Notes: generated from the letters alone by a model not told the origin. A DNA stretch of 64,000 bases from Mytilus californianus (GCF_021869535.1 NW_026262582.1:37510001-37574000); one strand, 5' to 3'; shown: positions 16,938-59,527, counted from the stretch's first letter. Numbers and translations: made by a program.

Positions 16938-17165
16938 TTACAGACAAGTGTTTTCGTAATTACGACTGTTGACATCAAGGTTTTGAATAAAGATAAAATC
17001 ATCTTCACTATCACTATCGCTATGGTCTGACTGTACTACCCCTCTTTTCAGTGAATGATCTATTCCGGTGTAAATTGTTCTGTTTTCTATCCCATGAATT
17101 TTAGTTTGCAGTGAATCAACTGGCTTGATTAAAACCTCTGCATAGTGTAGACCTGGTGTGCATTC
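16938..17165 (-). CDS. Receptor A exon 9: ITIM (LHYAEV), ITSM (TIYTGI), acidic patch, terminal NYENTCL*
   Basis: ttatttatcatag| phase 0; 76 codons ending TAA; about 91% nt identical to B exon 9. Confidence 0.9.
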   Translation of the reverse strand, partial: ECTPGLHYAEVLIKPVDSLQTKIHGIENRTIYTGIDHSLKRGVVQSDHSDSDSEDDFIFIQNLDVNSRNYENTCL

Positions 17166-20100
17166 CTATGATAAATAAGTACACATATTTTAAAAACTAC
17201 ACAACACAATATGCATCATTTAAAATACATTAACTTACCGTTAACGCAAAGTATTTTACAGTGGGATGTCATTAAATAGTCATAAATAATAATCAACCCC
17301 TGTTAAGACTACGTTTTAAGACAAATTCCACATTGACATTATTTGTTTGTTTAAAGAATTATGTACATTTAGTAATATATCATTAATGAAAAAATAATAA
17401 GAATTCAAAAGCTTTCAACACAGGTGTTTCTCTCTAAACTTCCGAACTATTCTATTTAAGGAATGACTGTCTATGAAGAAATAACATAAAAAATGTGGTG
17501 CACACTAAATAAACCGCGAAGCGGGTTATTTTAAAGTGTGAACCACATTTTTGATGTTATTTCGAATAGACAGAACAAAAGTTACAGTCATTCCTTATAA
17601 TTTAATTTTAAATTGCTTTTTAAACCGGAGTAATTATTAAAACACGTTGATGACGTCACAGTCACATGACAAAATTATCTCTATGAGCTGATAGACAAAA
17701 CACTGTCAGCCAATTAGAAGACGCGTTACATTCAAAATTAAATTATTGAATTATGAAAAGTCTTAGGTGTAAAACCACCATTGATTTTCCCCTATTAGTC
17801 TTTGTTTAATTTGCATTTTTCAAAAAAATGTGCAGAATTCATCTTTGTTTCAAATAAAGAAATACTTGGCATGCGTAAAGTTATATCCTGTCTAATACTA
17901 AAGACACAATTTCCCACAGCATTTCATTGCATATAAGAAAAAAAAAACCCATCACTGTAAGTTAACTAATCAAATTGTCGATCCCTATTTTTCCTTATTT
18001 TTGAAACACCTAATATATATATTTATGACCAAGATTTTTTTTACTGAAATGAAATGTAGGATTTATTTCCTAGATTTGTCAAATTCAAGATAATGTTCTA
18101 TTTTTTTATCCTTTTATCGAATGCAACCGGATGTGACACTATAATTTATTGGTATTACACCTAATATGACACATTTTCACGTCTATAAAAAGTCTGCAAT
18201 TACATTCAATCCTCTGTGTTTCTATACCAGAACAAGGTATAATTAAAATCTGTTCAAATCTATACTGAAATGATAATGACTTATGCGTATTTTTTCGCGT
18301 AAAGTTTTTTATTGTTAAAACAGAAACAAAACTATGGAGTTTCTTGAGAATGATCGTTATCTTTTCGTTATTGATATACCAATTTTTGTATAAAAGGTAT
18401 TACATGCAATGAAATAAATGAAATATGAACCTCGAATAAAAATATGTACAATTTGTAATTGTATAACAGAACCCTATAAATCTGCTAAACGAAAACATTT
18501 CATATTCTTGGATTCATGGTGTCTAGGCTGCGTTTGTGTGCGAACAATTGTCAAAAAGTAGTATATTAGTAGCTTTTATCTAAAGCTTAAATTTTAAAAA
18601 CAGCAGGTAAGTAAGTTGCGTTCAATTACCTTAAATGAACAAATGTGCAGCACTCATTAACTGAACATATTTATAAAAAAGAGGAAATATTTTTGATAAG
18701 GAAATATTTACACACAGATATAAATAACCAAATTGCGTGTATTCACTTTTAAATACTTATATTTAGTTTGACCTTACCAGGAAATGTTAAAGTTCATTGT
18801 TTGATTCATTTGTCATGTGCTATTAAAAAATAAGTACAAGAACTGACTTAAATTGATTCCTTATATAAAAGATTCATAACTTTTTTTTATTAGACTTCTT
18901 TAACACACGATCCTCTACATTCTAATGTTCAAATGATCGTCTAAAAAACATATTTCAACCTTTATCACAAACTAATGGATAATGTTAATACAATATATTA
19001 TGGTTTAAGGAATGGATCAATAAGTCTTTGAAACTGAGTTTTGTAAGATGGTAAGTTTGACGACAGACATTCTGTAAGAAGCTATCGAAACACACATTGT
19101 AATCCTTTGCTGACTTGTTCCATAACTTATGAGGCCTAAAAAAGTTATGAGGGTGCTTCCCAGGAAAAATCCACATGTGCTTGTTTTCTCTTTAATTAAC
19201 GGTTTGATAATGATCATATGTCTAAAAGTGATGCCATATGGCTAAGAGGCAGCTACCTTTTTACATAAAAAAAATAAAAAGGATGTAATCCCAGCATAAA
19301 ACAAAAGTCTATACACATTCCAGTTCAAAATATTCAGTTTCCTATCATCGTTTTCTTGATAAGTGTTTGATTGCTGTTCTTTCCCAACGAGTACAGTACT
19401 ACCTGTGACTTTATCTTATTAATGGTGGCCATAAAAACTATGTCAACCATGTTGGCCCTATATGTCCATCAATATCCCCCCTGTTGCTTAATTAATACTC
19501 AAGGTATAAATAAAAAACTAGTCAAGGATAAAGGGAATTCATGACTGCATTGAAGTGTTAAAATTATATAACTTACGGGTCAAGTGTCTCAGGTAAAACA
19601 TATGTGTTTGTCAAATTTAATCATTGTTAATTACTGTGAGTATGACAAGAAAATTCTAAAAAAAAAAAAAATAATGAAACTAGTTGAACATATAGCGTAA
19701 TAACATTTATTTTGAAAAAAATTGTCTCATGACTGTTTGTTTTGATGTTATACCTTTTAAATAATTCTATCAATTTAAGTTATTTTTACATGTATGTTTT
19801 GTTAAGTGAAGAATAAATGAATATCATCTTCTAATATAATGCAAACTTTCACAATGCCTGCCTTTTTCTATTGAAAAGGTGTTTCTCAAATTAATTTTCT
19901 AAAATCAAAATTGTTTATCTTAGAGAGACTGATCTGCATTCAACATTGTTTAACAAATGTTTAAGATTATCTTTAGGACTTATTCTAAATAAAATTTAGG
20001 AAATTTATTATTTTTCTATTGAATAAATATATTCAAAATATATTCATTACAGCAAAAGTTGATAATATTTTTATTGTCATACATGTATAAACTTATTATA

Positions 20101-23100
20101 ATGAGTTTGTGATAAAAAAAACCAAAAACAAACATTAGAATGCAAAGAAATAATTCTAAACACATGGAAAAAAAATATTAGGTTTCTGCGCTCAGTTCTA
20201 ATGACTATTTTATAAAGGAGGCAATATTTAAAACATGTTCCATGTTGAAGAGTTTAAGCATTTCTTTTACTTTTTGTTCTTGGGTAACATGGATAAGAGA
20301 CATTACTATGAGAAGGTAAACAATTTTCAAATAGATTATCTCCAAGTTGTTTTGTTAATTTTAATTACAAGGAGGAAGTGTTCTTCATCGTCCAGCAAGT
20401 GGCACAGTTTACATATTCTATCCTTTCTAGGAAATTTACTTTTTGTCCTATCAAATGTGTGACTTTATGTCCGGTGACTTTTTGTCCTGTGACTTTCTGT
20501 CCGTCTACCATTTTATATTGTCCACTATTTTCTATTTCTAGATTATGACCACTAATTCTTTACTAACTGAAGCATTTGAGTTTACAGTTAAGTTTTCATC
20601 ATAAGTTTTTATTCTATTTTCAAAAATATCTTTATATTTTTCTGTAAATTCATTTTTAATCAAGGGCTTTAAAGAGTCTAATTCATTCAAGTCCCTGCAC
20701 AAAAAGTGATTTAATTAATAGACCATACAACTGTCACAATTTATTTATTTGGAGACAAATTTTGGCTGTTAACTGACAGAAATTAGCCAAACTGAAAATA
20801 ACATGTTTGATAAGTTTACAATTGTTTCAAAAAACAAGACAATGTTTCTTTAGATAATTTCTTGTCATAAGATTCACGTTATTTTGAGAGATAAGAACAT
20901 TTTGCATTATGATTGGAATTTGTAATGAGCATTTATCAAAATTTGATAACAAGGTGGGCATTTGGAAAATTTAAGTCTCTTCGGTGATTCGTCATGCACA
21001 ACTCCTGTTTCGAGATTTGAAAAAAAATAATGATTAACAAAAATTGTTAATTCCTAAATTATATAACGATATTTGTAGTTTTCCTGAATAATAATAAAAA
21101 GTACAATTTTGTTATCAAAATTTATTGTAAAAGGATTGATATTGATCATTTTATTTTGTTAAGAAACAGGCTTGTTAAATTACTTGCTTCATGGGTCCTT
21201 CAAACATATCATTTGCACGATTATAAGTTATAATTCATTTCATAATTCAAACAAACAATTGAATACAACGTACATCATGTACAATAACTTTTTTATTACT
21301 TAAAAAAATAATTATTTAAAGGATTCTCTGTTTTGTTTTTGAAATGCTAGTCAATAACTTATCTTTGATTTTTTTTTCATTTCTACTCAAGATTATAACC
21401 AAGAAGAAATTAAAAGAATAAGAAACAAAAAACAAATAAAAAAAGACATACAAAAATGATTAAAAAAAACCCCCCAAAAACCATTAAAATAAAATAAAAA
21501 TAAATAAATTTAAAGACAGAAAAATCAACAAATAATATAAATTATCAAAGATTAAAACAACATTGTATTCTACATTTAAAAAAAGGTGAAATTTCAATTT
21601 TAAAAGAAATCTGAGTTACCTGTACAGGTAAATTTTAATGAAACATACAAGCTGAAAACTTCAACCCTGATTGGTTTCAACAGGTAACATAATTAAATAA
21701 AAAATCAACTATGTTTTATGACCCCAATAAATGGCCAAAATCTCAAGATTAAATACCCCAATAAATGGTCACCATTTGATGTCGACGATACAAGAGAGTG
21801 GACATAATTAAGAGGATGTCCCAGGTTGTACTGTATGCTAATGTACTAAAAAGTGTACGGTGGGTCATTTTATGATAAGGACAAATAATAGCACTGAAAA
21901 AAGAGTGAATGCAAAGAGTTAACAAAAGCTTCATGAAATGCCAAAGATTACATTATTATCTATTAAGGGGTGAATTAATTAAAATCAATCATTATTGTAA
22001 CTGGGAAGACAGTCCATTACATGTAATTTAACTGCACTTGACTCGTTTGTATTTCTTTCATTGCTGGTAGCACTTCTATACTCACAAACACCAAGATCTG
22101 AAAAGCAAAGTATGTTTTTACATGATCAGAATATTTTTGAAATCTTGATGAAAGTAAAGGAGATTTTTCATCACAACTTGAGTCAAAAAGATACAGTAAC
22201 AGTCTGATTAACTTATTTTTCCTTCATCTAGTTAAAACGTTTATGTTGAGAAAACCTTACTGTTGACCTAAACACATATTGGCAATTTTACCAAAGAAGA
22301 GTAATATCATTCTACTCAAATATAAAAAAGGATAGAAAAGGGAGGATCAAACAAATGCATTTATGCTTTGCAGTGTTGAGCATTTTTGTTATTAAGAATG
22401 CCATTAATTAGTGATTTGTAGTTTGTCTCTAGGAAATCTATACAGTAATACATATTCAAGTAATGCCCTTCTGGCTAATAGATATATGAAGAGATTAAAA
22501 ATAATTTGTCTGATGTACGATTATACGTTGGTAATACACAATGTGTTAGTAAATGCGCTAACAAAATCGATCTGAATGTACTTTTAATTTTGTTTTGAAA
22601 TTAAATGTCGTATGAATAATTCAGAACTTTTACATCGATATGTTACGCCATGAAGTTATAGTTTCTCAGATTGCATATTCGATATGAAATGCATCACACG
22701 TTAATTTGTGATTCAATCAAAATTGCTTCTTAATCAACAGTTACATTGTGCCTTTGTCTATTTTGGAATAAAAAAATGAGAACCCTCTTCCCATAGAAAT
22801 GTAAAACTTGTTTTTCGTTTTTAATAATATTGTTCAGTAAATTTTACAATTACCTGCATCATTAACATAAATGATTGGTTCGATATATTCTTGAACTGTT
22901 CTATCATGAAACGGCATTTCCGGTTCGGTTGAATTTTCATTTGGTGGAACATTTGAATTCTGGTACAACTGATTTTCTACAGTATTATCTTCTTCTGAAA
23001 ATATTAAGATGATATAATGCAATAATGTGTGTTTTTATACACGATTGGTTTTAAAATTTTTGGCTATGAGCACGATGCGCGTTTCTAATGGAGGCAAGTT

Positions 23101-26100
23101 CAGTCGAGCTCATTTAACGGACAAAATGAAAAAGAGAGTCATTATAATTTACTTAAGCAAAGCTTTTTTATGATGTCTCTTTGTGCACAACCTACTTGTA
23201 CATATTGTATCGTTGTATTCATTGTTCTACATAAGGAAATGTCTGTATCAACTCAGGAATATGACAGTTGTTTTCCGTTTGTTAGATGTGTTTGAGCTTT
23301 TAATTTTGCCAATTGTTTTCATGTTAGTTTACCTTTTATTTTGGTTAACGAAGGGAAGTCAGATTATGTTTTAATCTGTCTTTAATTAAAAAAACAATTA
23401 GGATTCAGATGTTTTATATGTTCAATTCAAATACCAAAAAAGAAAAATGAATGAAGTAACCAAGGAGGGAGGAGTAATGTACCTACTTTTTGTATTAACC
23501 AATAATGATCTATGTATTTTTAAGAATATGAGTAGATCAAAGCTCCTAGAGCAGATATTCTCAACGAGGTATTGCAGGCTTGTAAATAAAACAGATATTA
23601 GTCATTTGACAGTCCTAGTAAAGCCACTACGTTTTTGAAGATATTATGCAATGATGATGTTCAGATGATTGGAGGATGATCGATATTTGGATATCAGTAA
23701 ACAAATGTCAACCAATTTGACGTTGGTACGATACATAATACGAAAGCAGAACTGAAAAAAAATTTGTGCTTCCAAAGCGATTTTCTTAATATGTATATCT
23801 TTACCATTGTTAGTTATCAGATGTCAAATTAGATTATATATAATCATGGAATTTGCACATGTGTTCACGTGATGTTTCTGTCTTTAATCCTGAATCTTTT
23901 ATAAACAAGTGATCAAATATTTTTGTATTTAAGTTATATAGGATATACAGAAGACAACATGCATTACTATTTACCATTTATTTCTTCAGTTGTTGTATGG
24001 CTGAAATAGAAGTAGCATTTAAACTATATATCAATACATTCATATTGTTAACAATAACATAACAATAGTTTGTAACAGGTTCCAATTAAAATAAATCCGA
24101 CTTGAAATATCTCTATAGCCAAAAAGAAGCAATTTAAGTGGATTCAAAAGTTTGTTTAAGGATATATTATGGTATCTACAATAATAGTTCGTTAAATTCT
24201 CATAACATTCAAACCATTTAATTAAGATTGACTATATATGTAATATTTGCTACATTTGTATATAACAAGAACCGTAAATTCAGTTGTTGCTTTTTATTAT
24301 TATTATAATTATTCCTTTATTGTGATTTCACTTAAATTTGTTAGGTTGATCTACTTTTTTATCCAGTTAATTAAAAGGTTTTGACCTTGATATCACATAT
24401 GATACCGATAAAAACAAATTTCACTTGTGTTTCGAGCTCAACACTTTTGATATTTGGCATCCGATAAATTTTTGTTATCTAACTTTTCGCTAGTGTTCCG
24501 GTATAATTGTCCAAGCAATTTTCATCAGTTTAATATTGCATTTTATTTGCTCTTCATTTTCTATATTTGATTTGACCTTACAATATGTTTTTATCATATC
24601 AATAGATTTATCATATGTAAATTTAATGCCTGTCTGGCGCACCAAAGTTTCCGTATGGTATCTATAACAACCATTGGTAGTAGCCCAGTAGTTAGTATTC
24701 TAGTCTTAATACGAACAATTATTGATACGATAATATTTTGTAAATTTGCTGATTATAAAATGTTGAATTATTTGCATCGTTAAGATTTAAACAATGGACA
24801 CATTTCCATAACCGTTCAGATTTTCAGTTATGATTATCTTTAATTTCGGTTTTGATTGGACCACCACTAAAAATTCGTGGGTAGGCGAAACACGCGTATT
24901 TTAATATATATATATTGATATTTTTAATGAGTTTTTTAATTCACTGGGTCGGTAAATGTGATGATAAACGTTTTGTGTACCAGCACATTTTGTGTTGACA
25001 TGACATATTATTGATACGGTTCTGTTTTAATGACAAATAACCCACTTAGCTGCAACAAGCATTTTTTTTTTATACAAAAAGAAAGCCCCGTTTATATAAA
25101 CAAAATTGCATTTAGACTTTATATTGTTTGTCCATATAGGGGTATAACATGGTTAATTTTACAATGAAGAACTGAGAAAGTCGTATTATTCCCCGGCTTT
25201 TGGTTTGTTAAACATATGTTAAATGTAAAGTAGTTTTAGCAGAAAAAAAATGTGTTGTTTTTGTAATATATGTTAACAGTTTATGCTCAACCTTTAACGT
25301 CAGATAAATATTGAACATATATCAGTTTGTAATTTTTTCAGTTTTGCGTGTAAGAAAATTTCTACTTTCCAAACCTATAAGTTCCAGTTTTGTTATTTTT
25401 TTTCATATCACACTGTATGACTGGTGATGCATGCATAGCTGGATACATTTGTTTTGTAGACGCACCTACTATAACTCTATTTGAAACTGACTAGGCTCTG
25501 AATTTGTTAATCCAATCGTTTTTGTTCACTTTCATCACTAGCGATATTTCAAAGGACATCTGTATACTGCTGTTAAGTTCAAATTGAGGAAAAATGCAAA
25601 TGTTTTGACTCACTGAAACAGCAGCTCTCTTCAGTTAAGATTTTTATATTTGTATGACTTCTTGATATTTTCATACAAGAACTACATATGTTTGAATGTT
25701 ATAGTTTTCCAAGGTTCTTGCTTTATATTCATGTTGGAGTGAAACGTATTAATTTAATTAAATATATACATTGTACAAATTAAGGAGGCCACCGATCGGA
25801 GAACCAATAAACAATACAAAGCTACATTATTAGACGACTCGTTCTATTCTGACGATGCCTTATATGCTATAACGACGAGCGAAAATATGAAAATTACATC
25901 ATAATTACAATAAACTGCACTATGTTTGAACAATAATGCAAAAATCAATATGCATTTTAACAATCAAAAGACCTAATCAACACATTTTTGTTAAAATATT
26001 GATCTATCATAAAATAGTTTACCTTTCTGTATCTCTTCGACATGACAAAAGAAAGGAACTCAACATTTCACCTAAAATACCGACTAGATATAATGTTTAT

Positions 26101-31477: not shown

Positions 31478-32185
31478 AGTCCACCAACTTCATTTTATCT
31501 GTATAAAAAAAACCAAGAATAAATGTTCAATTCTTGCAACAGGTAATTCATTGAGATATACACAACTTAGAGAAATACAGATAGTGTTCATTAAGTCTTT
31601 GAGTTGAGTTCTTGCTATTTTAAATACACAAATAACTCTTAAAACCGTTTTTGATTTATGTTCATACTATAACAACTGTCTTTCAAGCTTTTGTGATTCC
31701 AGGAGCGGATCCATGGTAGAGACAGTGGTGAGTGAAGAGAGGCTTAATCATTTTGAAGGATTTTATGCAACATTTAAATAAAAAAATCGTATCACACTAA
31801 TAGCAAGCAATCAAATGTGCCATTACATTGTTTTGTTAAATACTCATTGCATTAATAATAAAGTGTGTAAAGAAAGAATAATTCTGAAAGTGAAAACGAT
31901 GATAAAGAATATGTTTAACCAAGTCAATATATAATATTGTTTCAAATAAATGTTTGAAGCATGATACTGTTTAAATTGATGACGGGTTCACTAAAAAAAA
32001 GAAACCACACATGCACTATATAACATAACACTGTGAATCCATCATATAATACTTGTAACAGATCATAATTCTATTACGTGTATGGCAGTTTTGAAAATCA
32101 AGATAAGCGCCTGCAAAATATCAAAAAAATATACATGCGTATACACGTAAATCAAGTTTTTTCGTCATTATGGTTGACACTTTAC

Positions 32186-32290
32186 CTTTTTTGTTGCTCT
32201 TTTTATCCTCAAATAATTTATTTGTTATATCAAATGAATGCAGGTTCAAATTAGAATTTAATTTTCATTGTTGTCATATATCTACATATC
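32186..32290 (-). other. Probable non-coding first exon (5' UTR) of receptor A; start not defined
   Basis: GGATAAAAAGAGCAAC..AAAG|GTAAA donor context conserved with ~60463 in copy B; the signal exon has a splice acceptor upstream of its ATG. Confidence 0.5.
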
Positions 32291-32291
32291 G

Positions 32292-41332: not shown

Positions 41333-41687
41333 TTTTACCACTGGGTCGATGCCACTGCTGGTGGACGTTTCGTCCCCGAGGGTATCACCAGCCCAGTAGT
41401 CAGCACTTCGGTGTTGACATGAATATTAATTATATGGTCATTTTTATAAAATTTCCTGTTACAAAACTTTGAATTTTCGATAAACTAAGGATTTTCTTAT
41501 CCCAGGAATAGATTACCTTAGCCGTATTTGGCACAACTCTTTGGAATTTTGGGTCCTCAATGCTCTTCACCTTTGTACTTGTTTGGCTTTATAACTATTT
41601 TGATTTGATCGTCACTGATGAGTCTTATGTAGACGAAACGCGCGTCTGGCGTATTAAATTATAATCCTGGTACCTTTGATAACTATT
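41333..41687 (+). mobile_element. Retrozyme-like monomer (~355 bp) carrying a type I hammerhead ribozyme
   Basis: Full-length copy of a repeat also at 63148-63522(-), with fragments at 4770-4845, 11940-12040, 24660-24900, 36660-36730, 40350-40390, 50808-50996. Confidence 0.85.
41610..41651 (+). ncRNA. Minimal type I hammerhead ribozyme, intact core; predicted cleavage GUC^ after 41646
   Basis: Stem I CGUCA/UGGCG, CUGAUGA, stem II GUC-UUAUGUA-GAC, GAAA, stem III AC-GCGC-GU with palindromic loop, GUC. Confidence 0.9.
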
Positions 41688-49543: not shown

Positions 49544-49771
49544 TTACAGACAAGTATTTTCGTAATTACGACTGTTCACATCAAGGTTTTGAATAAAGAT
49601 AAAATCATCTTCACTGTCATTATCACTATAGTCTGACTGTACAACCACTCTATTCAGTGAATGATCTATTCCGGTGTAAATTGTCCTGTTTTCTATCCCA
49701 TGAATTTTAATTTGCTGTGACCCAACTTGCTTAATTGAAACCTCTGCATAGTGTAAGCCTGGAGTGCATTC
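49544..49771 (-). CDS. Receptor B exon 9: ITIM (LHYAEV), ITSM (TIYTGI), NYENTCL*
   Basis: 228 nt, phase 0, TAA at 49544-49546. Confidence 0.9.
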   Translation of the reverse strand, partial: ECTPGLHYAEVSIKQVGSQQIKIHGIENRTIYTGIDHSLNRVVVQSDYSDNDSEDDFIFIQNLDVNSRNYENTCL

Positions 49772-52700
49772 CTATAATAAATAAGTGTATATAAAGGAAA
49801 AGCTACAAAATATATGAGAATAATTTTTTTTTTTCGTTTCATTACTTTTATACAAACGTTTGGTGTTGTTTATATAGGACCTTCCATTTTTTTTAACTTA
49901 ATGAAAGCTTACAATTGAAATTGGTCCAAAGCTTTACTGAAATGATCATGACCTTAACGGTTTGAGTGTTCAAACAGCAACAAACTAAGGAACGTCTTGA
50001 GAAAGGTTGTATTTATTCTAAATTAACAACACCAAACGTTTGTATAAAAGTAATAACGTGCAATAAAACACATGCCATATGAACCTCGAATAAAATTATA
50101 TGCAGTTTGTACTTGTATTTCAGAACCATAAAACAAAACAAAAAATAATATTCTCAGACTCATGGTGTCTGGGTTTGTATTATATTCGCAGCTTTCATCG
50201 AAATTAAAACTGTAAAATAGAAGTTTGTAGGATTATTTTACTTCAATGTACAAATTTACAGCACTCATAACTGAACATATTTATAGCAAAAAGGAAAAAT
50301 ATTAACACACATGCATTTAACAAAATGTAGTTGGATTGCTATTGAGACAACCGTTCCCCAAAATTCCCTATAAAATGGATGCAATAAAGTATAAACACAA
50401 AGTATTAGCAACCTTCCACAAAAAAAAACTTGAATTTTCATATTTTTGGAAATGTTTTTAAAAAACTTTCTGGAAATACCATGTAATATTAAAAAAACTT
50501 GCATTTCTTTTAGTAAAAGTATATTTATTTCAACCATACCAGGAAATACTAACACACATTGTTTTATTCATTAATTATGTACTATAAAACTTTAAGTACT
50601 TAATTCAAATTCAGTTTTCCTATCAGCATTTCAATAATAAGTGTTTGCTTGCTGATTTAACCTAAAGAGGATGTTATTGTACAAAAAACGTGGTCAGTGA
50701 AAACAATGAAACCAATGTTTGATAAGAACAGACAATAGCACGGAGATAAGATAAAAAGCACCGAGTTTACACAAGCAATATGAAATACCAAATAAAATAG
50801 AGAATGGAAATAAACTCATCATAGATACCATGAGTGAAATTTTGTGTTTGCGCCAGACGTGTGTTTCGTCTACATAAGACTCATCAGTGACGCTCGAATT
50901 AAAAAAGTTAAAACGGCAAAAAAAAAGTACGAAGTTGAAGACCATTGAGCTAAAAGTTTAGCAAAATACAGCTAGGGTGATCTTTTCCTGAGGTAAACAT
51001 TTGGAAGGTGTCAGAGATAAAAACGAACCCACCGGAAAACAGCACATGGCCACTGGATCTTCAACGCAGGGAGAAATTCCCGCAAAAATTACATTATTAT
51101 CTCTCATTGGGTGTCTTATTTACAATCAATCACTATTATAACTGGAAAAGACAGGCCAATAATAATTACATATAATTTAACTGCAGTTGACTCAGTGGTA
51201 TTTCTGTAATTGCTGGTAGCACCAGTGTCATCAGAAACATCAAGATCTGAAAAGTAAAGTATGTTTTTACATGATCAGAATTCCAAATTTTTTGAAATCA
51301 TTCATGACAGAAATGAAATAAGAACTGAGAATTTAACACCAACTTAAATTTAAAACATACCTAGCACATGTAGCAGTATTGTAAAATTATTTTTTATTTA
51401 TCTAATTATACTGTTTATATCAAGAAGAACTTACTATTGAACTGAACAAATATTGGCAATTTTATCAAAAACAGAGCCATACGATTCTACAAAAGTATGT
51501 ACAAAATTGAAAAGAAGGACCAAACAAATTATGTCTGGTTTGGTAGCATTTATTATAAAATGCTTTCCACTATCTCATGCCATTAATCAGTGATTTTAGA
51601 AAAATGGTCCGTTTATAAATAACAAGAAAATAAGGTTTCAACTCCCTCAGGCAAATTTGACCCTAGATGGATTTTTCTATTTTTATGTCCATTTTTGTAA
51701 TATAGCTCTAAAACTGTTTATGTTCATTTATATCCTTGGGTTTCAAATATTCGGCTTTGAGTGTTCCTGATGAAGGTAAATACAGAAAAGCGCATCGAAC
51801 GCATGAAAGCTATAACGTATTGCTTTATTTTTTGTAGTTACTTTTAGGAAATCTATACATTAATATATATTCAAGTAATGAGCTTCTGAAAAATAGATAT
51901 TAAAAGAATAAAACTAATTTGCCCAAAGTACAAATTTCGTTGAGAATATATACAATGTGTTAGTAAATACGTTCACAAATTCGATCTGAATATACTTTTA
52001 ATACTGTTTTAAAATGGAATGCAGTAAATTCAATTCAGGACATTTTACATTTATATGTAACGTCATTAAGTTACAGTTTTCAGATTACATTCAAAATGAA
52101 ACGCATTACATGTTAATTTGTGATACAATCGAAATGCTTCTCAATCTTTAACGTTTTCTATTTTGGAAGATAAAAATGTGAACCCTCTTCCCATTAAAAT
52201 ATAATAACTTGTTTTTCGTTTTAAGTAATAGTGTTAAAATTTTATAATACCTGCATCATGAACTGTTCTGTCAGGAAATGGTATTTCCGTTTCGGATGAA
52301 TTTCCATTTGGTTGGACATTTGAATTCTGGTACATCTGATTTTCTACAGTATTATCTTGTTCTGAAATATTTAGACTACATAATGCAAAAATGTGTTTTT
52401 GTTAACACAATTTGTTTTCAAATCTTTGGTTAAGATCGTACTAAATGGATGGAGGCAACTTCATAGAGCTCATCGGACGCACGAAATTAATCAAGTGTTA
52501 TCATAATTTAATAAATAACAGCTTTTTTATGATGTCTCTTCCTGCACAAATTACTTGTGCATATTGTATCTTGGTATTCATTTTCTACATTAGAAAATGC
52601 CTGTACTAAATCAGGAATATGATAGTTGTTTTCCATTCGTTTGATGTGTTTACGCTTTTGACTTTGTCATTTATTAAGGGAATTTCGGTTTTCAATTTTG

Positions 52701-55700
52701 CTTGGAGTTTTTTTTTGTTATATTATACTTTTCATTTAGGTCATTTTTATCAACGAAGGGACGTCATATTCGTGTTTTAATCAGTTTTCAAATAAAAACA
52801 ATTCAGATTATAATAATTCAGATCTTACATGTTTAATTCAAATAATAAATACATGGAAATACACCAAGTAGGATAGCGTAATTTGTCGACTTTTTTGTAT
52901 TAACCATTAAAGATCTTTGTATTCTTAAGAAAAGGAATCGGTTAAAGCTCCAAGATCAGATACTCTCAAAGTAATCCTGCAGGCTGGTGAATGAAAAAAG
53001 TTGTAAGTAATTTTGCAGTCCTAGTAAAGCCACTTTGTTTTGAGGATAGTAGGTGATTAAGATAAAGTGAACATAGGCAGTTTTTATTATTGGTAGAAAT
53101 TAAACTAAATCGTTGTTTGTCCCTGGTTTCTGTTTTGTTTTTTTCTTTTATTTAAAAATTATCACATAATTTTGTATTTAAATTATCTATGCTATGCAAA
53201 AGATCACATGCATTCTATTTACCATTAATTTCTTCATTTGATGCATGCCTGAAATATAAGTTTCATTTTATATACACATTGTAAAGACTAATATAATAAT
53301 ATTTGCAACTAGGTTCTAATTAAAATAAATCAACCTTTATGTTATCTCTATCTATTTTTACGCAATATTAGTTAGTTCAAACGTTTTTTCAAAGAAAGAT
53401 TATGTTAGTCATAATATTTTAAATTTTAAACATAAAAATCTGATTTCATCCCTTTAATTGAATTGGCAGTATATGTAACATTGGCTATTAAAGTATAATC
53501 GAAATCTCAGTGGTTGTTTCTTAATGATTTTAATCATTCTTTAATGCCTACTTTACTTAAATCTTTGAGTTAACTCTACTACTCTTTCCTCAAAGGTAAC
53601 AGTTTTTGAACTCGATAACACATGAGAGGACAGTAAAACAAATCTAATCAAGGGTTAAGAGCTCAATACTGTTGATATTTGTCATACGATACATTTACCG
53701 GTATTCTGAAATTATTGTAAAAACACTTTTCAGCAGTTCAATATTAAGCATAAAGTTTATGCTTATCTAACTACAGCACATAGGTTTTGCACATATCTTA
53801 TTTTTTAATTTCAAACTTGAATTGTAATAGCATTTTTGGCTCACCTGTCCCGAATGGCTAAGTGAGCTTTTCTCATCACTTGGCGTCCGTCGTCCGTCGT
53901 CCGTCGTCCGTCGTCGTCCATAGTCGTTAACTTTTACAAAAATCTTCTCCTCTGAAACTACTAGGCCAAATTTAACCAAACGTGGCCACAATCATCATTG
54001 GGGTATCTAGTTTAAAAAATGTATCCAGTGACCTGGCCAACTAACCAAGATGGCCGCCATGGCTAAAAATAGAACAAAGGGGTAAAATGTAGATTTTGGC
54101 TTATATCTCTGACACCAAAGCATTTAGAGCAAATCTGACATGGGGTAAAATTGTTTATCAGGTCAAGATCTATCTGCCCTGAAATTTTCAGATGGATCGG
54201 ACAACCCGTTGTTAGGTTGCTGCCCCTGAATTTGTAATTTTAAGGAAATTTTGCTGTTTTTGGTTATTATGTTGAATATTATTATAGATAGAGATAAACT
54301 GTAAACATCAATAATGTTCTGCAAAGTAAGATCTACAAATAAGGCAACATGACCAAAATGGTCATTTGACCCCTTAAGGAGTTATTCCCCTTTATAGTCA
54401 ATTTTTAACAATTTTTCGTAAATTTTGGTAATCTTTTACAAAAATCTCCCCTCTGAAAACTACTAAGACAAATTTAACAAAACTTGTACACAATCACCAT
54501 TAGGGTATCTTGTTTAAAAATTGTGTCCGACTACCTCGCCCGCGAACCAAGATGGCCGACATTGCTAAAAATAGTATATAGGATACAATGCAGTTTATGG
54601 CTCATATCTCTGAAACCAAAGCATTTAGAGCAAATCTGACAAAAAGATAAAATTGTTCATTAGGTCAAGATATATCTGCCCTGAAATTTTCAGACCATTC
54701 AGGCAAACCGTTGTTAGGTTGCTGCCCTTGAATTGGTAATTTTAAGAAAATTTTGCAGCTTTTGGTTATTATCTTAAATATTATAATAGATAGAGAAAAA
54801 CTGTAAACAGCAATAATGTACAGCAAAGTAAATCCTAAAAATAAGTCAACATGACCAAAATGGTCAATTGACCCCTTAAGGAGTTGTTGCCCTTTATAGT
54901 CAATTTTTAACAATTTTCATAAATTTTGTAAATTTTTACAAAATATTTTCCACTGTAACTACTGGGATAAGTTCATTATAGATAGAGATAATAGTAAGCA
55001 GCGAGAATGTTCAGTAAAGTAAGATCTGCAAACACATCACCATCACCAAAACACAATTTTGTCATGAATCCATCTGTGTCCTTTGTTTAATATGCACATA
55101 GACCAAGGTGAGCGACACAGGCTCTTTAGAGCCTCTAGTTTACCTTCCAAACATATCAGTTCTGGTTATCTTTATTTATGTCACATTGTTTGACTGGGGA
55201 TGTATGCATAATAATAATGGTATTGTGATTCATTAACCATGTAAACTATTCTAATCTTACTCAATGTGAAACATAATCGATTCTATTTTACTTGATATAT
55301 TTTTCATTTACTTTCTTCACATGTGATATGCAAAGGACATCAATATAGGGTCGTTTAATTCACCATACTGCAAGTGAATTTTGTTTGTCTTTTCTAAATA
55401 TCAACATTGTTGAATTTAGGTTGAAAGTATTTTAGATCCTCTTTACGTCTTGATTGAAGACTACAGTCTTTTTAAATGTTATGGTATGACTGTGTTCTTG
55501 GTGTATACAACCGATTAAATTGTCATTTAAGTAAATGTGTAGTTTTAATCATCCAACAACAATACAACAATTTGAGAATACGGAGTTACTTCCGTAAATC
55601 CTGATTAAATTATGACAATGCCGGATATGCATGCCATAACGAAGAGTGACAAATGTGCACTGCACATAAAAATTATAACAAACAGCAGTCTTTTTAAACA

Positions 55701-58700
55701 ATAATGTAAATATCAACCTGTATTTTAACAATTAAAAGTCCTTATCAACACCTGTCTGTTTAAATGTTTATCAATCAAACACTATTCATATCTTTTACCT
55801 TTTTGTAACTCTTCGACATGTGAAAAGAAAGGATCTCAACATTTCATCTAAAATGATATCACCATAAACATGATAGATATAATGTTAATATAAGAAATAG
55901 AAATACAATTGAAATTATATGTCTCGTGTGAGAAAAAAAAACAGTATGTTTTACTATGTTTCAACTTCTGAAAACTGCGAAAAAAATCTCACGCGTAAGT
56001 AACTGGGTTAGCAGTATCTTCATTATTTGTTTCAGTTTTTCACGGACATGCTCTGCATATTGATGTCACAGTTCTATGCACATTTTCACAATTGTCATCT
56101 TTCATTTGATGCCTCAATCACCAGAATATTTTCTATACAGTTTGATATTTATACCATTGCGTCGAAACTATTTTATTTTGGATATGTACTACTTCAAGAG
56201 TATGTTCTGTTTGACTGGGCCAAATTTGGTGATGTTATTTGTGTTTTTCAATGTACATGTACTGATTTTGTGTCATGGAAGTATTCGTGTTTTTACTATA
56301 ATCTAGTTCAAACGATCACGATATAATTTCTCGACATCAGTGAATGTGACACGTTACTGGATATGGACAATCTTTCAATTGGTATTGACAATAAACATGT
56401 CTTCGTGCACATTTGTGAAAAAATCTTTAAGCTTACCGAAACACATGAGATACATTCGGTTTCTTTAGGGATTTTGTTGATAAGTCTTTAAAATTTCTAT
56501 GATCTACTTTGTAATATACTTTGTGTCTTAGTTCACCAGCATTGTTTGCCCTTGCGTTTTCAATTTCTCTCTAATTGATTTTTTTATGTACGTTTGGTAT
56601 CATTTTGCTGTTCAGTCTTTCAGGCACTATTTGTAATCCACTGATCAATTTTAATTAGTGTAGGGCTAATAACTTAGATAACATCTAGTATAACCATACT
56701 ACATGTTAATGTTTTTGCCCGAAATCGGGGACTTCATCTGTGTATTTTTATTAATAGTTAAATGTGTTGTTTTTTCTGACGGGTTTTAGGACATACAGTG
56801 TTCATGGCAGATATATCCGATATCTCTCCAATTTTGTTTTAACAGTGTTTTCTTACCAATAGATGTCCCCTTCACTTTTGCTAGTCCAACAATTGTAATA
56901 CAACCTCCAAACAGAACAACAGGAATCATTACAAGCAAAATTACTAATGTCTGTTCATTGTTTCCTTGTTGATTTTTTGGAACTACAACAGATATAAATG
57001 TATGAAAATATAAATGCATGCAATGCTTAAGTAAAGAGTTTCTTTATTCTATATTGGATCGAGATAAAGGGGGAGGGTAGAGATCACACAAAACATTTTA
57101 ACCCCACTTCATTTTTAGCCTGTTCCAGTTCAGGAGCCTCTGACCTTTGTTAGTCTTGTAGGTTTTTTAATTTTAGTTCATTTATATGTTTTAGAGTTTA
57201 GTGTGACGTCCATTTTCACTGAACTACATGTAGCTAGTACACAATTATATTTAGGGGCCAGCTTAAGACCACCTCCAGGTGCATGATTTTCTCGCTGTAT
57301 TGAAGACCCATTGGTAGCTTTATGCTGTTTTCTGCTCTTTGGTCGGGTTGTTGTCTCTTTGACATATTCCCTATTTCCATTCTCAATTTAATTTCATTCG
57401 TCGGCAAATATAATCAAATTCATAATGTTTTATTTATCAATATAAATGATATCTTTCATTGACCTGTGATGGAACCTGTTATTTAAGTTTCGATGGTTTG
57501 TTTACATGCAAATAATTTAACTGTACTTACATTGAAAATTGGTTGTCTTTATTATCATTGGAAAACTTGTTGTGATCCCTAAACTTTGAGCCGTACAATT
57601 TGTTGTCGTGGTTTCTTTTGCTCTGTCTTTCAGAAGCACATACAATTTAAAATGTTTTATTAATACATTTCGTTTTGTTTAAAAAACAAACGTCCCATGT
57701 TTATCTTGTATTTATCAATTAAATTTGCTTGACATACCTTTTAAATTGTTTAAGTCGAATGCGGTAAAGCACTAGACCTTTTTAATGTCTGTAAAAGTCT
57801 TACTGATGGGTATCCGTCTGACAATGCAAAATGTATAAATTGTCAGCCTTATCAATACAAAAATGGAAATTGAGTTGAGTGCCTAATGCAGGGATACTTT
57901 TACGTTCTATACACGGTTCAAAATATCTTATAGAAAATGTTATAGAAGTCTGTAGGTAACATGTCGTTGTCAGTTTGTTTTCGATCTATGAGTTTGACTG
58001 TCCCTCTGGTATCTTTCGTCCCTCTTTGCTAGAGGAATATATTGTTCCATTAAAATAAGTCAGATCGTGTTTGAATACGGCATACTTAAACTAACCTTCT
58101 AAATATACGTTATACTTGGTCTCATAAAAAAGTCCATCATTATTAAATCTGCAGAAATAAAAACCAATGTCTCCTTTCTGAAAATTTGTGATAATCAGTT
58201 CATAACCTCCTTTATTTTCGTGAAATACATATTTTCCTTGGTTCAGCTTTGGGTTTCTTTTTTTATCTGCAAAGTAAACTAAATTGTTTTGTACATCATT
58301 GTTGATATCTGGCCCTAACCAGGTCACACCAGCGCCAGAACTGGAACATTTGAAAACAGCAGTTGCACATTTTTGAACTTTCACATTGATTGTGTCATTT
58401 CCAATGCCTGCAATTAAAGACGATACAAATAGAATGATAAGTAAATGAATAATATTTAGTGTTTTGGTCTCTACATAATTATAAATTCTCAAGATCAACT
58501 GAAGGTTAAGCAGAAACACATTCTGATTGAAATTCGTATTATTTGTTGAAAAGTTTCTACGGCTATTGTTGATAATTCCATCCTCATCATGACGGAACAT
58601 CCTTCAATTAATCACTTGTTTCATATCAACATGACTTAAAGTGCATTTTCAACAGAATATGTTGTGTATTACTCTAATGAGACATCAATCTTACTTAATT

Positions 58701-59527
58701 GCAATTAAAAAAAAAATCTGTCGTCAACACAAAATTACGAAAACAAATACAAACAAAAGTCATTAAGAACAAACAAAACATCATAAATTTTAACAAGCTC
58801 ATGAACACGCTATGGGATAACATTTTTTTATAAGATTTAACTTTGTCCCCTTCGATATTTTTTTATCAAAATAAAAAAATATATGGTGTTAATGTGACAA
58901 ACGACAACCATAACTTATTAAATTAGTACAATGAAAGAGATTCTATTTAAATTAAACCGAATTCGTTTTCATTCTATATAAACACCTTTCGCAAATGTGC
59001 CTTGTAGAAAGTAGAAGTGTTTTCATTCCGAATTAATTTGAACAAAGTAAAAATATAAATATATGTCAAAATTCGCAAAGCACACATGTTAAGAATTCAA
59101 CTTACAGTATCAATAATTGATTAATCCTGTTATTATAGTCCTGTAAATTGTCTGTTATATAGGTTTGATCATTGTTGAAGGCCGTTTGGTGACATATAGT
59201 TTCTAACCTGTATTGCATTTGGTCACTGGTTGAAGATTATTTCAATTGCAATCCTATCACTTCGTCGTATTCAAAATTGTTGGTCTTTTCGATGTTTATC
59301 GTTTTTTTGCAATGGTGTTGTAAATGCTTGTCCGAGTTATGAGTTTGGATGTCCCTTTCATATCTCCTATCATTTTTCTGTTATATTTTTCGTCATTGGA
59401 TATAATTTGTGGTTATTATACAATTTACTTTCGCTGTCACTGTTGTCTCATGTTAGTGTAATATAAATATACCTGAAACCATTTTTATTTGAACTGTTAT
59501 CGCAAGCAGAGCTAGAATTGCTGACAT
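49544..59527 (-). CDS. Receptor B: paralog of receptor A, 359 aa; join(59527..59473,58407..58096,57626..57531,56982..56857,55847..55799,53248..53223,52361..52251,51246..51170,49771..49544)
   Basis: Nine canonical exons, same phases as A, 1080 nt = 360 codons, single terminal stop. Confidence 0.87.
50851..50892 (-). ncRNA. Type I hammerhead ribozyme, intact core, in sense orientation within the last intron of receptor B (retrozyme fragment 50808-50996)
   Basis: RNA CGUCA CUGAUGA GUC UUAUGUA GAC GAAAC ACAC GUC^UGGCG; stem III loop ACAC, not palindromic. Confidence 0.85.
51170..51246 (-). CDS. Receptor B exon 8 (DLDVSDDTGATSNYRNTTESTAVKLY)
   Basis: 77 nt, phase 1->0; donor TAT|GTAATT. Confidence 0.8.
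51761..51802 (+). ncRNA. Hammerhead-like motif of a third family, within a ~51620-51835 repeat, antisense in intron 7 of receptor B
   Basis: Stem I GUGUUC/GAACGC, CUGAUGA, GAAA, A-GCGC-AUC; stem II (AGGUAAAUACA) barely pairs. Confidence 0.55.
52251..52361 (-). CDS. Receptor B exon 7 (MYQN motif; 30 nt shorter than A)
   Basis: 111 nt, phase 1-1; donor CAG|GTATTA. Confidence 0.85.
52593..52732 (+). repeat. Interspersed family B (CCTGTAC.AA.TCAGGAATATGA.AGTTG...TTTGATGTGTTT); also 3047-3155(-), 23232-23330(+), 60938-61180(-)
   Basis: Direct sequence recurrence; the 23232 and 52593 copies sit at orthologous intron positions. Confidence 0.8.
53223..53248 (-). CDS. Receptor B exon 6: 26-nt micro-exon (RHASNEEIN)
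   Basis: tatttcag| and ATG|GTAAAT. Confidence 0.8.
53833..55140 (+). mobile_element. Non-autonomous Helentron/HINE (DINE-1-like) element with ~500-bp tandem core, in intron 5 of receptor B
   Basis: T-run start, GCTCACCT / AGTGAGC subterminal IR, (CGTC)n microsatellite, core units from ~53932, ~54435, ~54934 (partial), 3' AGGTGAGC then hairpin AGGCTC-TTTA-GAGCCT, ending CTAGTT. Confidence 0.8.
55799..55847 (-). CDS. Receptor B exon 5 (DEMLRSFLFTCRRVTK)
   Basis: 49 nt, phase 1->2; ttttag| and AAAG|GTAAAA. Confidence 0.85.
56857..56982 (-). CDS. Receptor B exon 4: transmembrane helix LVILLVMIPVVLFGGCITIVGLA followed by KVK
   Basis: 126 nt, phase 1-1; ORF 56786..57019. Confidence 0.9.
57050..57390 (+). 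repeat. Interspersed family E (...TTTAGGGGCCAGCT...TGAAGACC..TTGGT...GTTGTTGTCTCTTTGACACATTCCCCATTTCCATTCTCAATTT); also 44690-44910(+), 40090-40300(-), 34150-34330(+), 29630-29680(+)
   Basis: Direct sequence recurrence. Confidence 0.8.
57531..57626 (-). CDS. Receptor B exon 3: stalk DRAKETTTTNCTAQSLGITTSFPMIIKTTNFQ
   Basis: 96 nt, phase 1-1; donor T|GTAAGT. Confidence 0.85.
58096..58407 (-). CDS. Receptor B exon 2: Ig domain (C21...W30...DIGFYFC)
   Basis: 312 nt, phase 1-1; inside ORF 58091..58600; donor AAG|GTTAGT. Confidence 0.92.
59473..59527 (-). CDS. Receptor B exon 1: signal peptide MSAILALLAITVQIKMVS
   Basis: Acceptor tttctttaattcag| before 59552; donor CAG|GTATAT. Confidence 0.8.

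What the first reader, a model, noticed from the sequence alone, without database searches (positions are those of the whole stretch)
16938..59527. Tandem pair of intact single-Ig receptors with ITIM + ITSM tails in a bivalve: candidate inhibitory immunoreceptor cluster
Seen: two 9-exon genes that splice to uninterrupted 375- and 359-aa ORFs (signal - one Ig - mucin-like stalk - uncharged TM - tail with LHYAEV, TIYTGI and terminal NYENTCL). The signalling exons are absent from the ORF track. Known: (I/V/L/S)xYxx(L/V) and TxYxx(V/I) are the SHP-1/SHP-2-recruiting ITIM and ITSM, and ITIM followed by ITSM behind a single Ig domain is the PD-1 layout, with CD300 and CD33-related Siglecs similar. 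Inference: this is a mussel family of convergent checkpoint-like or self/non-self receptors. I do not recognise it as a named family. The ITIM-ITSM tyrosine spacing is 24 aa in both copies, similar to tandem-SH2 ligands.
Basis: partly seen in the sequence, partly recalled or inferred. Interest (0 to 1): 0.85.

Follow-up and report, generated by a model that had tools for sequence, protein, structure and literature searches.

The report
Mussel single-Ig receptors with ITIM/ITSM tail
Two neighbouring California-mussel genes encode small antibody-like surface receptors whose tail carries the two tyrosine motifs that vertebrate inhibitory immune receptors use, and the same tail turns up on many larger mussel receptors, so this is a real but not unprecedented receptor family.

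Summary
Two colinear minus-strand paralogues, each with 9 GT-AG exons, splice to 359 aa (59527-49544) and 375 aa (31477-16938). Each reads signal, one V-set Ig, short Thr-rich stalk, uncharged TM, then a tail with LHYAEV, TIYTGI (tyrosines 24 aa apart) and terminal NYENTCL.

The window is Mytilus californianus (GCA_021869535.1). The 359-aa model is identical to RefSeq LOC127718062. LOC127718056 covers only exons 5-9 of the other gene.

The tail is not private to these genes. Its architecture recurs in about 20 Mytilus IgSF proteins, including V-Ig-FN3 receptors auto-named NCAM1-like. These share a juxtamembrane VENQLYQS motif, the ITIM, IHG, the ITSM at a fixed 24/25-residue spacing, an acidic Ser cluster and DDF. 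They also share the same phase-0 intron before the tail exon.

The tail exon is under purifying selection (dN/dS 0.20), whereas the Ig exon evolves fast (0.74).

The most likely function is a phosphotyrosine docking site for a tandem-SH2 phosphatase, probably inhibitory. This is inferred, not shown.

ITIM-bearing IgSF inhibitory receptors are already described in oysters, so these are new members of a known kind. Other first readers of this scan noted ITIM-type tails elsewhere in this genome.

The parts
59473..59527 (-). Gene A (359 aa, = RefSeq LOC127718062) exon 1: ATG and signal peptide, ends in phase 1
58096..58407 (-). Gene A exon 2: V-set Ig domain (Cys-Trp-Cys core, Y-x-C), phase 1-1
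   Evidence: Pfam V-set E 5e-7, 30.3 bits above cut-off 26; AF2 model pLDDT 75 and V-domain matches
57531..57626 (-). Gene A exon 3: Thr-rich stalk
56857..56982 (-). Gene A exon 4: transmembrane helix without charged residues
   Evidence: low exon-confined depth in run X2
55799..55847 (-). Gene A exon 5 (49 nt, phase 1 to 2). Together with exon 6 it forms an in-frame 75-nt cassette that may be skipped.
   Evidence: absent from the M. trossulus model P0002; zero depth in X2
53223..53248 (-). Gene A exon 6: 26-nt microexon (phase 2 to 1)
   Evidence: included in RefSeq P0006
52251..52361 (-). Gene A exon 7: juxtamembrane tail with conserved VENQMYQNS (YxN)
   Evidence: contigs of runs X2 and X3 end exactly at both exon borders
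51170..51246 (-). Gene A exon 8 (phase 1 to 0), contains SNYRNT
49544..49771 (-). Gene A exon 9: signalling tail exon with ITIM LHYAEV (49756-49739), IHG, ITSM TIYTGI (49684-49667), acidic Ser cluster, DDFIFI, NYENTCL and stop
   Evidence: (dN/dS 0.20)
31414..31477 (-). Gene B (375 aa; RefSeq LOC127718056 covers only exons 5-9) exon 1: ATG and signal peptide
29078..29389 (-). Gene B exon 2: V-set Ig domain
   Evidence: Pfam V-set E 4.9e-6, 27.2 bits above cut-off 26
27365..27466 (-). Gene B exon 3: Thr-rich stalk
26762..26890 (-). Gene B exon 4: transmembrane helix
26023..26071 (-). Gene B exon 5 (49 nt)
23975..24000 (-). Gene B exon 6: 26-nt microexon
22854..22994 (-). Gene B exon 7: VENQLYQNS plus a B-specific 30-nt insertion that adds two tyrosines (EYIEPIIYVN)
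22021..22097 (-). Gene B exon 8
16938..17165 (-). Gene B exon 9: signalling tail exon with LHYAEV (17150-17133), TIYTGI (17078-17061), NYENTCL and stop; 88% nt identity to gene A exon 9

Best explanation
These are two tandemly duplicated, intact genes of Mytilus californianus. They encode small type-I membrane receptors: signal peptide, one V-set Ig domain, a short Thr-rich stalk, an uncharged TM helix and a roughly 165-180-residue tail predicted without confident structure. The TM and tail belong to a Mytilus-wide IgSF receptor family that also includes V-Ig-FN3 ('NCAM1-like') receptors. The two genes here are its single-V members. Proposed mechanism (inferred): ligand-driven clustering lets a Src-type kinase phosphorylate the ITIM tyrosine (Y292 in A, Y308 in B) and the ITSM tyrosine (Y316 in A, Y332 in B). 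The doubly phosphorylated tail then docks both SH2 domains of a tandem-SH2 phosphatase (the SHP2/Csw orthologue, possibly also SHIP). That damps tyrosine-kinase signalling in the cell that carries the receptor. Three YxN tyrosines (Grb2-type) and a C-terminal T-C-L (class I PDZ-ligand form) may add adaptor or scaffold contacts. Shown here: gene structure, homology, and conservation and constraint of the motifs. Inferred: phosphorylation, the partner, the inhibitory direction and the cell type.
For: Gene models. Gene A is identical to RefSeq P0006 and gene B contains RefSeq P0001. RNA-like evidence: run X2 has depth only in bins holding exons 4, 7 and 8 outside repeats. One of its 392-nt contigs matches 52251-52362 with no mismatch and then leaves the genome at the exon 7 donor. 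A 113-nt X3 contig equals exon 7. Constraint: between A and B, dN/dS is 0.20 in exon 9, 0.74 in the Ig exon and 0.75 in the stalk. Exon 9 is 88% identical at nucleotide level, against 67-79% elsewhere. Motifs: all 25 tails tabulated keep [LM]xY[AS]E[VI] and T[IVM]Y[ST]x I with a tyrosine spacing of 24 or 25, although the linker sequence diverges. Conservation of the -2 residues and of the spacing is what bidentate SH2 binding needs and what an AP-2 YxxPhi signal does not need. The shuffle test gives about 0.001. The ITIM has Ala at pY+1 in 24 of 25 tails. PMC8631942 reports this residue as conserved in BTLA and SHP1-recruiting receptors, and shows bivalent parallel binding of ITIM and ITSM to the two SH2 domains. 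The intron before the tail exon is phase 0, five codons before the ITIM -2 residue, in gene A, gene B, P0032 and P0023. Precedent in bivalves: oyster CgNCAM1 (3 Ig + FN3 + TM + two ITIMs) binds SHIP2 and lowers cytokine expression, and oyster IgSF inhibitory receptors CgIgIT, CgIgIT2 and CgSiglec-1 are cited there (PMC11841013).
Against: No phosphorylation, binding or expression in haemocytes was tested. The raw-read RNA run X21 had about one read on exon 4. Both motifs also fit YxxPhi endocytic signals. ITIM/ITSM pairs in PZR, PECAM-1 and SHPS-1 use SHP2 as a positive signalling scaffold (my own knowledge), so 'inhibitory' does not follow from the motifs. The tail's relatives are adhesion-type V-Ig-FN3 proteins. 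The Ig dN/dS of 0.74 is fast but below 1. Full-length AF2 gave no usable model.
Confidence: 0.55

Rival explanations
1. These are adhesion or contact-signalling receptors of the NCAM-like, PZR or PECAM type rather than immune checkpoints. The V domain mediates homophilic or heterophilic cell contact in epithelium, nerve or muscle. The ITIM/ITSM pair recruits SHP2 as a positive scaffold (migration, adhesion signalling), and the C-terminal TCL anchors the receptor to a PDZ scaffold.
For: TM plus tail are homologous to Mytilus V-Ig-FN3 proteins annotated NCAM1-like, NCAM, IGDCC4 or DSCAM. The V domain weakly matches the first V domain of P0026 (E 0.003, shared NPKLN). The best structural matches are adhesion-type V domains (CAR D1, nectin-1, MPZL1, IgLON, CRTAM) alongside BTN and PD-L1. 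The C-terminal T-C-L is kept in the single-Ig clade and in P0026, P0029 and P0033. PZR uses two ITIMs and SHP-2 in adhesion and migration (abstract of PMC7290418).
Against: The names are automatic. True NCAM tails lack ITIMs according to PMC11841013. The oyster protein with this architecture behaved as an inhibitory receptor in haemocytes (PMC11841013). The fast-evolving, repeatedly duplicated ectodomain is more typical of immune-type receptors than of core adhesion molecules. The TCL end is lost by stop-codon changes in P0003 and P0009, and most multi-Ig relatives end differently.
Confidence: 0.27
2. The conserved tail is mainly a trafficking module. YAEV and YTGI act as YxxPhi AP-2 signals. 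The Ser/Asp/Glu cluster is a CK2-regulated acidic sorting signal. The acidic DDF-x-x-[IV] stretch is a LIR-like or adaptor-binding site. On this reading the proteins are endocytic or scavenger receptors.
For: Both tyrosine motifs fit YxxPhi. The S-x-[DE] cluster and the DDF[IMV][YF][IV] motif are conserved wherever the model reaches that region (22 of 25 tails), while the two tyrosine motifs are in all 25.
Against: AP-2 recognition does not explain the invariant L/M and T at -2 or the fixed 24/25 spacing of the two tyrosines. The juxtamembrane and C-terminal YxN tyrosines are not sorting signals. This role could coexist with SH2 docking.
Confidence: 0.08
3. The genes are decaying or unexpressed duplicates whose open frames are fortuitous or annotation artefacts.
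For: Gene B is only partly annotated in RefSeq. RNA depth is very low in the runs laid. Several relatives in other Mytilus annotations are truncated.
Against: Both genes keep open frames over 9 exons with canonical splice sites. The tail has dN/dS 0.20. Orthologues of both the A type and the B type exist in other Mytilus species. Exon-limited contigs occur in two runs.
Confidence: 0.03

Closest known systems
Mytilus V-Ig-FN3 receptors auto-annotated 'neural cell adhesion molecule 1-like', NCAM, IGDCC4 or DSCAM (P0022, P0025, P0026, P0033) and their M. californianus relatives P0023, P0029, P0032
   Same: The TM and whole cytoplasmic tail are homologous (BLASTP 170-359 vs 443-623, E 7e-8). Shared features are the juxtamembrane V[ED]N[QR][LM]Y motif, ITIM, IHG, ITSM, the acidic Ser cluster and DDF, and sometimes the -TCL end. 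The phase-0 intron sits at the same position before the tail exon. The N-terminal V domains are weakly similar (E 0.003).
   Different: Those proteins carry further I-set/Ig and FN3 domains and have a tyrosine spacing of 25. The two genes here have one V domain, a short stalk, spacing 24, and an NYENTCL end.
Oyster CgNCAM1 and the other oyster ITIM-bearing IgSF receptors CgIgIT, CgIgIT2 and CgSiglec-1 (PMC11841013 and its references 24-26)
   Same: They are bivalve type-I IgSF receptors with ITIM-type tails. CgNCAM1 has the V/Ig-FN3-TM-two-ITIM layout and nearly the length of P0026 (617 vs 623 aa). It binds SHIP2 and lowers inflammatory gene expression in haemocytes. This gives a working precedent for the mechanism.
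   Different: They have multi-Ig ectodomains. Sequence homology of the tails to the Mytilus module could not be tested because no oyster sequence was on hand. My recollection that CgIgIT has ITIM plus ITSM and recruits SHP2 comes from memory and was not checked (the paper is not held).
Vertebrate single-V ITIM/ITSM receptors: PD-1, BTLA, G6b-B; also PZR/MPZL1 (two ITIMs)
   Same: The layout is one V-type Ig, a TM, then an ITIM followed by an ITSM (or a second ITIM) about 22-26 residues later. This fits bivalent binding of tandem SH2 phosphatases (PMC8631942). Ala at pY+1 of the ITIM matches BTLA rather than PD-1, and additional YxN (Grb2-type) tyrosines also recall BTLA. MPZL1 is among the structural V-domain matches.
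   Different: There is no specific sequence relationship. The PDB sequence search gives only generic V-set hits at E about 1e-3, and Foldseek hits are spread over CAR, BTN, PD-L1, MPZL1, CD8 and nectin. The tail is much longer, with a conserved acidic and DDF segment that these proteins lack. The resemblance is one of design, not membership.

Membership tests
ITIM/ITSM-bearing IgSF receptors (functional class) | Type-I membrane protein with an Ig ectodomain and an uncharged TM | tested here: met
   Signal peptide, V-set exon, and a single hydrophobic helix without charged residues
ITIM/ITSM-bearing IgSF receptors (functional class) | ITIM (I/V/L/S)xYxx(L/V/I) and ITSM TxYxx(V/I) in the tail, conserved among relatives, at a spacing that suits tandem SH2 domains | tested here: met
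   LHYAEV and TIYTGI lie 24 apart. All 25 related tails keep both motifs at 24/25. Shuffle P is about 0.001.
ITIM/ITSM-bearing IgSF receptors (functional class) | Tyrosine phosphorylation and recruitment of SHP1/SHP2/SHIP, with an inhibitory effect | not testable with these tools
   Needs a phosphopeptide pull-down, co-IP or reporter assay
Mytilus 'NCAM1-like' V-Ig-FN3 receptor family (shared tail) | Homologous TM plus cytoplasmic tail, with the same intron position and phase before the tail exon | tested here: met
Mytilus 'NCAM1-like' V-Ig-FN3 receptor family (shared tail) | I-set/Ig and FN3 domains between the V domain and the TM | tested here: not met
   Only one V-set exon lies between the signal and stalk exons. 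P0026 has V-set, I-set and fn3.
PD-1 / BTLA / PZR (orthology) | Specific sequence or structural similarity of the V domain and tail to that family above other V-set proteins | tested here: not met
   Only generic V-set hits, best E 9e-4 to pIgR and antibodies. Foldseek top hits are CAR D1, BTNL2, BTN3A1 and PD-L1; MPZL1 is at rank 17 with similar scores.
CD33-related Siglecs | V-set followed by C2-set domain(s) | tested here: not met
   There is a single Ig exon and no C2-set match. The sialic-acid-binding arginine was not examined.
NCAM1 proper | Five Ig plus two FN3 domains | tested here: not met
   One Ig domain and no FN3

The most novel reading that the evidence does not exclude
The terminal exon is an old, reusable signalling cassette. 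It holds an ITIM, IHG, an ITSM at a fixed spacing, an acidic cluster and DDF, and is preceded by a conserved phase-0 intron. It has been kept on receptors with very different ectodomains, from one V domain to V-Ig-FN3, across bivalves. If the same cassette is found in oyster CgNCAM1/CgIgIT-type receptors and other lophotrochozoans, it would show that bidentate ITIM-ITSM docking of tandem-SH2 phosphatases was fixed as a module in an invertebrate lineage independently of, or before, vertebrate checkpoint receptors. The fast-evolving single-V members would then be candidates for a diversified recognition (self or pathogen) repertoire.
Probability: 0.25. Interest if true: 0.65.

Novelty: new member of a known kind. 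Interest (0 to 1): 0.4.

Why it matters
Mussels rely on innate immunity and are hosts of transmissible cancers (my own knowledge, not checked here), so how their cells restrain activation and tell self from non-self is an open question. This work gives precise gene models for two single-V receptors. More usefully, it defines a conserved ITIM-ITSM tail exon that marks a whole set of Mytilus IgSF receptors. That yields a simple sequence handle (a tail-exon profile) for cataloguing candidate inhibitory receptors in bivalve genomes. It also yields a defined pair of tyrosines for binding and mutational tests with mussel SHP2/Csw and SHIP. It is an extension of what oyster work has already shown, not a new principle.

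Tried and rejected
The joint table therefore showed no exon-exon joints. Only contig ends at exon 7 and the depth pattern were usable. The exon 8-9 and 1-4 junctions were not covered.

(2) Full-length AF2 with 8 sequences failed (pLDDT 31). Only the Ig domain folded.

(3) phmmer of the tail exon against 1.84 billion representatives gave just 5 hits. This at first suggested a private tail. A profile that included the two distant fragments then revealed the wider family. Because the first search was at its detection limit (E 3e-4 for a Mytilus relative), absence outside Mytilus cannot be concluded.

(4) Pfam finds nothing in the tail. The ESM Atlas gave only low-score mollusc 'hypothetical' clusters.

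(5) A conserved 30-nt candidate exon (52584-52555, NEYQDTICT) was considered. It was rejected as constitutive because it is 31 nt in gene B, which breaks the frame, and it is absent from the RefSeq models.

(6) The oyster CgNCAM1 and CgIgIT sequences or motif strings could not be obtained.

(7) The self/non-self reading was left untested for lack of polymorphism data.


Full report
**Observation**

Six-frame translation finds LHYAEV, TIYTGI and NYENTCL exactly twice each. All are on the minus strand, in two short open stretches at 49771-49544 and 17165-16938.

A minus-strand comparison of 60500-48500 with 31500-16000 shows the two regions are colinear duplicates. Identity is 67-79% through exons and introns alike, but 88% over the last exon.

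I read each conserved block in three frames with its splice sites and assembled two 9-exon models.

- **Gene A:** exons at 59527-59473, 58407-58096, 57626-57531, 56982-56857, 55847-55799, 53248-53223, 52361-52251, 51246-51170 and 49771-49544. This gives 1080 nt and 359 aa.
- **Gene B:** exons at 31477-31414, 29389-29078, 27466-27365, 26890-26762, 26071-26023, 24000-23975, 22994-22854, 22097-22021 and 17165-16938. This gives 1128 nt and 375 aa.

All 16 introns are GT-AG. The phases are 1,1,1,1,2,1,1,0 in both genes.

**Identity of the locus**

The tail exon of gene A was searched with phmmer against 1.84 billion representatives and found five proteins. Cluster look-up and a word-indexed search named them.

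- P0006 is 'uncharacterized protein LOC127718062 [Mytilus californianus]', 359 aa. It is identical to my gene A model.
- P0001 is LOC127718056, 171 aa. It is an exact substring of my gene B model, from an internal Met in exon 5 to the end.

The genome record is GCA_021869535.1, scaffold JAKFGE010000010.1. Gene A lies at 37,559,544-37,569,527, so the window is about 37,510,001-37,574,000.

Gene A is therefore already annotated, without a name. Gene B is annotated only in part. My model adds its signal, Ig, stalk and TM exons.

Full-length or partial relatives exist in M. trossulus, M. galloprovincialis, M. edulis and M. coruscus, all 'uncharacterized' or 'Ig domain-containing'.

A tree of the Ig domains places gene A with M. 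trossulus and M. galloprovincialis proteins (support 100/97). It places gene B with an M. coruscus protein (80/92). The A/B duplication therefore appears to predate the split of these species.

tblastn with all family proteins finds no third copy in the window.

**Anatomy of the protein**

- Exon 2 matches Pfam V-set above the gathering score in both genes (30.3 and 27.2 bits against a cut-off of 26).
- Across 15 family members the Cys-Trp-Cys core, WLGP, NPKLN and G-x-Y-x-C are invariant or nearly so.
- An AF2 model of the domain (pLDDT 75) matches V-type domains of many families at similar scores: CAR D1, BTNL2, BTN3A1, PD-L1, MPZL1, CD8, nectin-1 and TIM-3. Foldseek E is about 1e-6 and TM about 0.6-0.75.
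- Sequence search of the PDB gives only generic V-set hits near E 1e-3. There is no orthology to a named vertebrate receptor.
- The stalk is one Thr-rich exon of 32-34 residues.
- There is one TM helix without charged residues.
- The tail has seven tyrosines in each gene. In gene A these are Y232 (MYQN), Y272 (NYRN), Y284, Y292 (ITIM), Y316 (ITSM), Y332 and Y354 (NYEN). The protein ends in T-C-L.

**Are the motifs meaningful?**

Three lines of evidence say yes.

First, in 20,000 shuffles of each tail, an ITIM followed by an ITSM 20-31 residues later arises in about 0.1% of cases.

Second, between A and B the tail exon has dN/dS 0.20. The Ig, stalk and TM exons have 0.74, 0.75 and 0.63, with similar dS.

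Third, and most informative, the tail is shared far beyond these two genes. I built a profile from gene A plus tail pieces, including two distant fragments. It recovered 30 Mytilus proteins. Among them are:

- P0022 (564 aa, 'NCAM1-like', M. galloprovincialis)
- P0025 (562 aa, 'IGDCC4', M. coruscus)
- P0026 (623 aa, 'NCAM', M. coruscus; Pfam V-set, I-set, fn3)
- P0033 (510 aa, 'DSCAM', M. edulis)
- P0023, P0029 and P0032, three M. californianus proteins; P0023 and P0032 map to the same scaffold at about 31.8 and 33.3 Mb, and P0029's contig length points to that scaffold but it was not on record when looked up

In all 25 tails tabulated (about 20 distinct genes or fragments) the following are kept:

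- The first motif is [LM][HQN]Y[AS]E[VI].
- The second motif is T[IVM]Y[ST][GDE]I.
- The tyrosines are 24 residues apart in the single-Ig clade and 25 in all others, although the linker sequence differs.
- An IHG-type turn between the motifs.

Wherever the model reaches that part of the tail, three further elements also recur:

- A Ser/Asp/Glu cluster followed by DDF[IMV][YF][IV] (22 of 25 tails).
- A juxtamembrane V[ED]N[QR][LM]Y motif.
- In some proteins, a -TCL end.

BLASTP of gene A against P0026 aligns TM plus tail (170-359 vs 443-623, E 7e-8). It also aligns, weakly, the V domain with P0026's first V domain (E 0.003).

The intron before the tail exon is phase 0 and lies five codons before the ITIM -2 residue in gene A, gene B, P0032 and P0023.

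The two genes are thus the single-V members of a Mytilus receptor family defined by a common TM-plus-tail unit.

**Expression**

Only one read-laying run was allowed, at most 6 kb. I laid exons 4-8 of gene A (51150-57149). Intronic repeats dominated the tables, and no exon-exon joints were listed.

What can be used is the following.

- Outside the repeats, run X2 has depth only in bins holding exons 8, 7 and 4, and none in bins holding exons 5 and 6 or plain intron.
- One 392-nt X2 contig matches 52251-52362 without mismatch at its end. It has 279 further letters on the exon 8/9 side.
- The depth in the exon 8 bin equals what that contig would give.
- A 113-nt X3 contig equals exon 7.
- An X1 contig runs across the exon 7 donor into the intron, so X1 is DNA-like.
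- The raw-read RNA run X21 has about one read on exon 4.

This is consistent with low-level spliced transcripts. It is also consistent with an isoform that skips the in-frame exon 5+6 cassette, as in the M. trossulus RefSeq model P0002. It is not a proof of all junctions. The identical RefSeq model is further, not fully independent, support.

**Mechanism**

Three conserved features fit what bivalent binding of a tandem-SH2 phosphatase requires: the -2 residues, Ala at pY+1 of the ITIM, and the fixed spacing. PMC8631942 shows parallel binding of ITIM to nSH2 and ITSM to cSH2 for PD-1 and BTLA, and reports Ala at pY+1 as typical of BTLA and SHP1-recruiting receptors. An endocytic YxxPhi signal would not require these features.

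In oysters, receptors of this kind have been tested. CgNCAM1 (three Ig, one FN3, TM, two ITIMs, 617 aa) binds SHIP2 and reduces inflammatory gene expression. The same paper cites CgIgIT, CgIgIT2 and CgSiglec-1 as IgSF inhibitory receptors (PMC11841013).

I therefore take SH2-phosphatase docking, with inhibitory output, as the most likely function (0.55).

The main rival (0.27) is an adhesion or contact receptor that uses the same motifs to recruit SHP2 positively, as PZR does. This is supported by the adhesion-type relatives and the PDZ-ligand-like end.

A trafficking role (0.08) may coexist with either. Non-functionality is unlikely (0.03).

**Comparison and novelty**

By layout the proteins work like PD-1, BTLA, G6b-B or PZR. 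By descent they are not members of any of these. They do belong to a Mytilus family whose larger members are auto-named NCAM1-like.

Whether oyster CgNCAM1 carries the same tail module could not be tested, because no sequence was available.

No paper in the library links Mytilus to ITIM receptors or contains these motif strings.

Other first readers of this scan noted ITIM-type tails on Ig receptors elsewhere in this genome (15 notes). One describes a 5-Ig cluster 11 Mb away (s1-330671). These notes are unchecked.

**Verdict**

This is a real, correctly described pair of genes. They are new members of a known kind (bivalve ITIM-bearing IgSF receptors). The added point is that the ITIM-ITSM exon is a conserved cassette across Mytilus receptors. 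Interest is moderate.

Noticed in passing
window 50850-50893 (-) and 41609-41652 (+): There are two type I hammerhead-like matches with the full CUGAUGAG...CGAAAC core. Both are below Rfam's gathering score (27.8 and 29.7 bits against 34). Nothing reached gathering in the whole window.
   Followed up: partly
window 36987-39064 (+): A run of ORFs lies between the two receptor genes, with a weak reverse-transcriptase match (RVT_1, E 1e-4). It is probably a decayed non-LTR retroelement in the intergenic spacer.
   Followed up: partly
window 53750-55150, 52550-52750, 51550-51950: Intronic stretches of gene A carry depths of thousands to hundreds of thousands in every run laid, with many internal joints and loose ends. 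They are high-copy repeats. In the stranded RNA run X21 the 53750-55150 element is covered about 20-fold more on one strand.
   Followed up: no
window 52584-52555 (-) and 23226-23196 region (-): A conserved 30-nt stretch with an AG acceptor and GT donor would add NEYQDTICT in frame to gene A between exons 6 and 7. The copy in gene B is 31 nt and would break the frame. It is not in the RefSeq models.
   Followed up: partly
window 55847-55799 and 53248-53223 (gene A exons 5 and 6): The two small exons together are 75 nt, so they are in frame. They are missing from the M. trossulus, M. galloprovincialis and M. coruscus models, where the TM exon joins exon 7 directly, and they have zero depth in run X2. 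They may be an alternatively spliced juxtamembrane cassette.
   Followed up: partly
window 22994-22854 (gene B exon 7): Gene B has a 30-nt insertion relative to gene A. It adds EYIEPIIYVN, that is, two more tail tyrosines, one of them of YxN form.
   Followed up: no
window 51169 downstream (start of gene A intron 8); proteins P0007, P0010, P0012: Several annotated relatives end just after exon 8 by reading into the intron, and so lack the ITIM/ITSM exon. They could be annotation failures across a long intron or real tail-less isoforms.
   Followed up: no
L003:1-2417 (beyond the window's right end, about 7.6 kb past 59527): The next called gene upstream of gene A encodes a 370-aa product with no Pfam hit on record. 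It was not examined for family membership.
   Followed up: no
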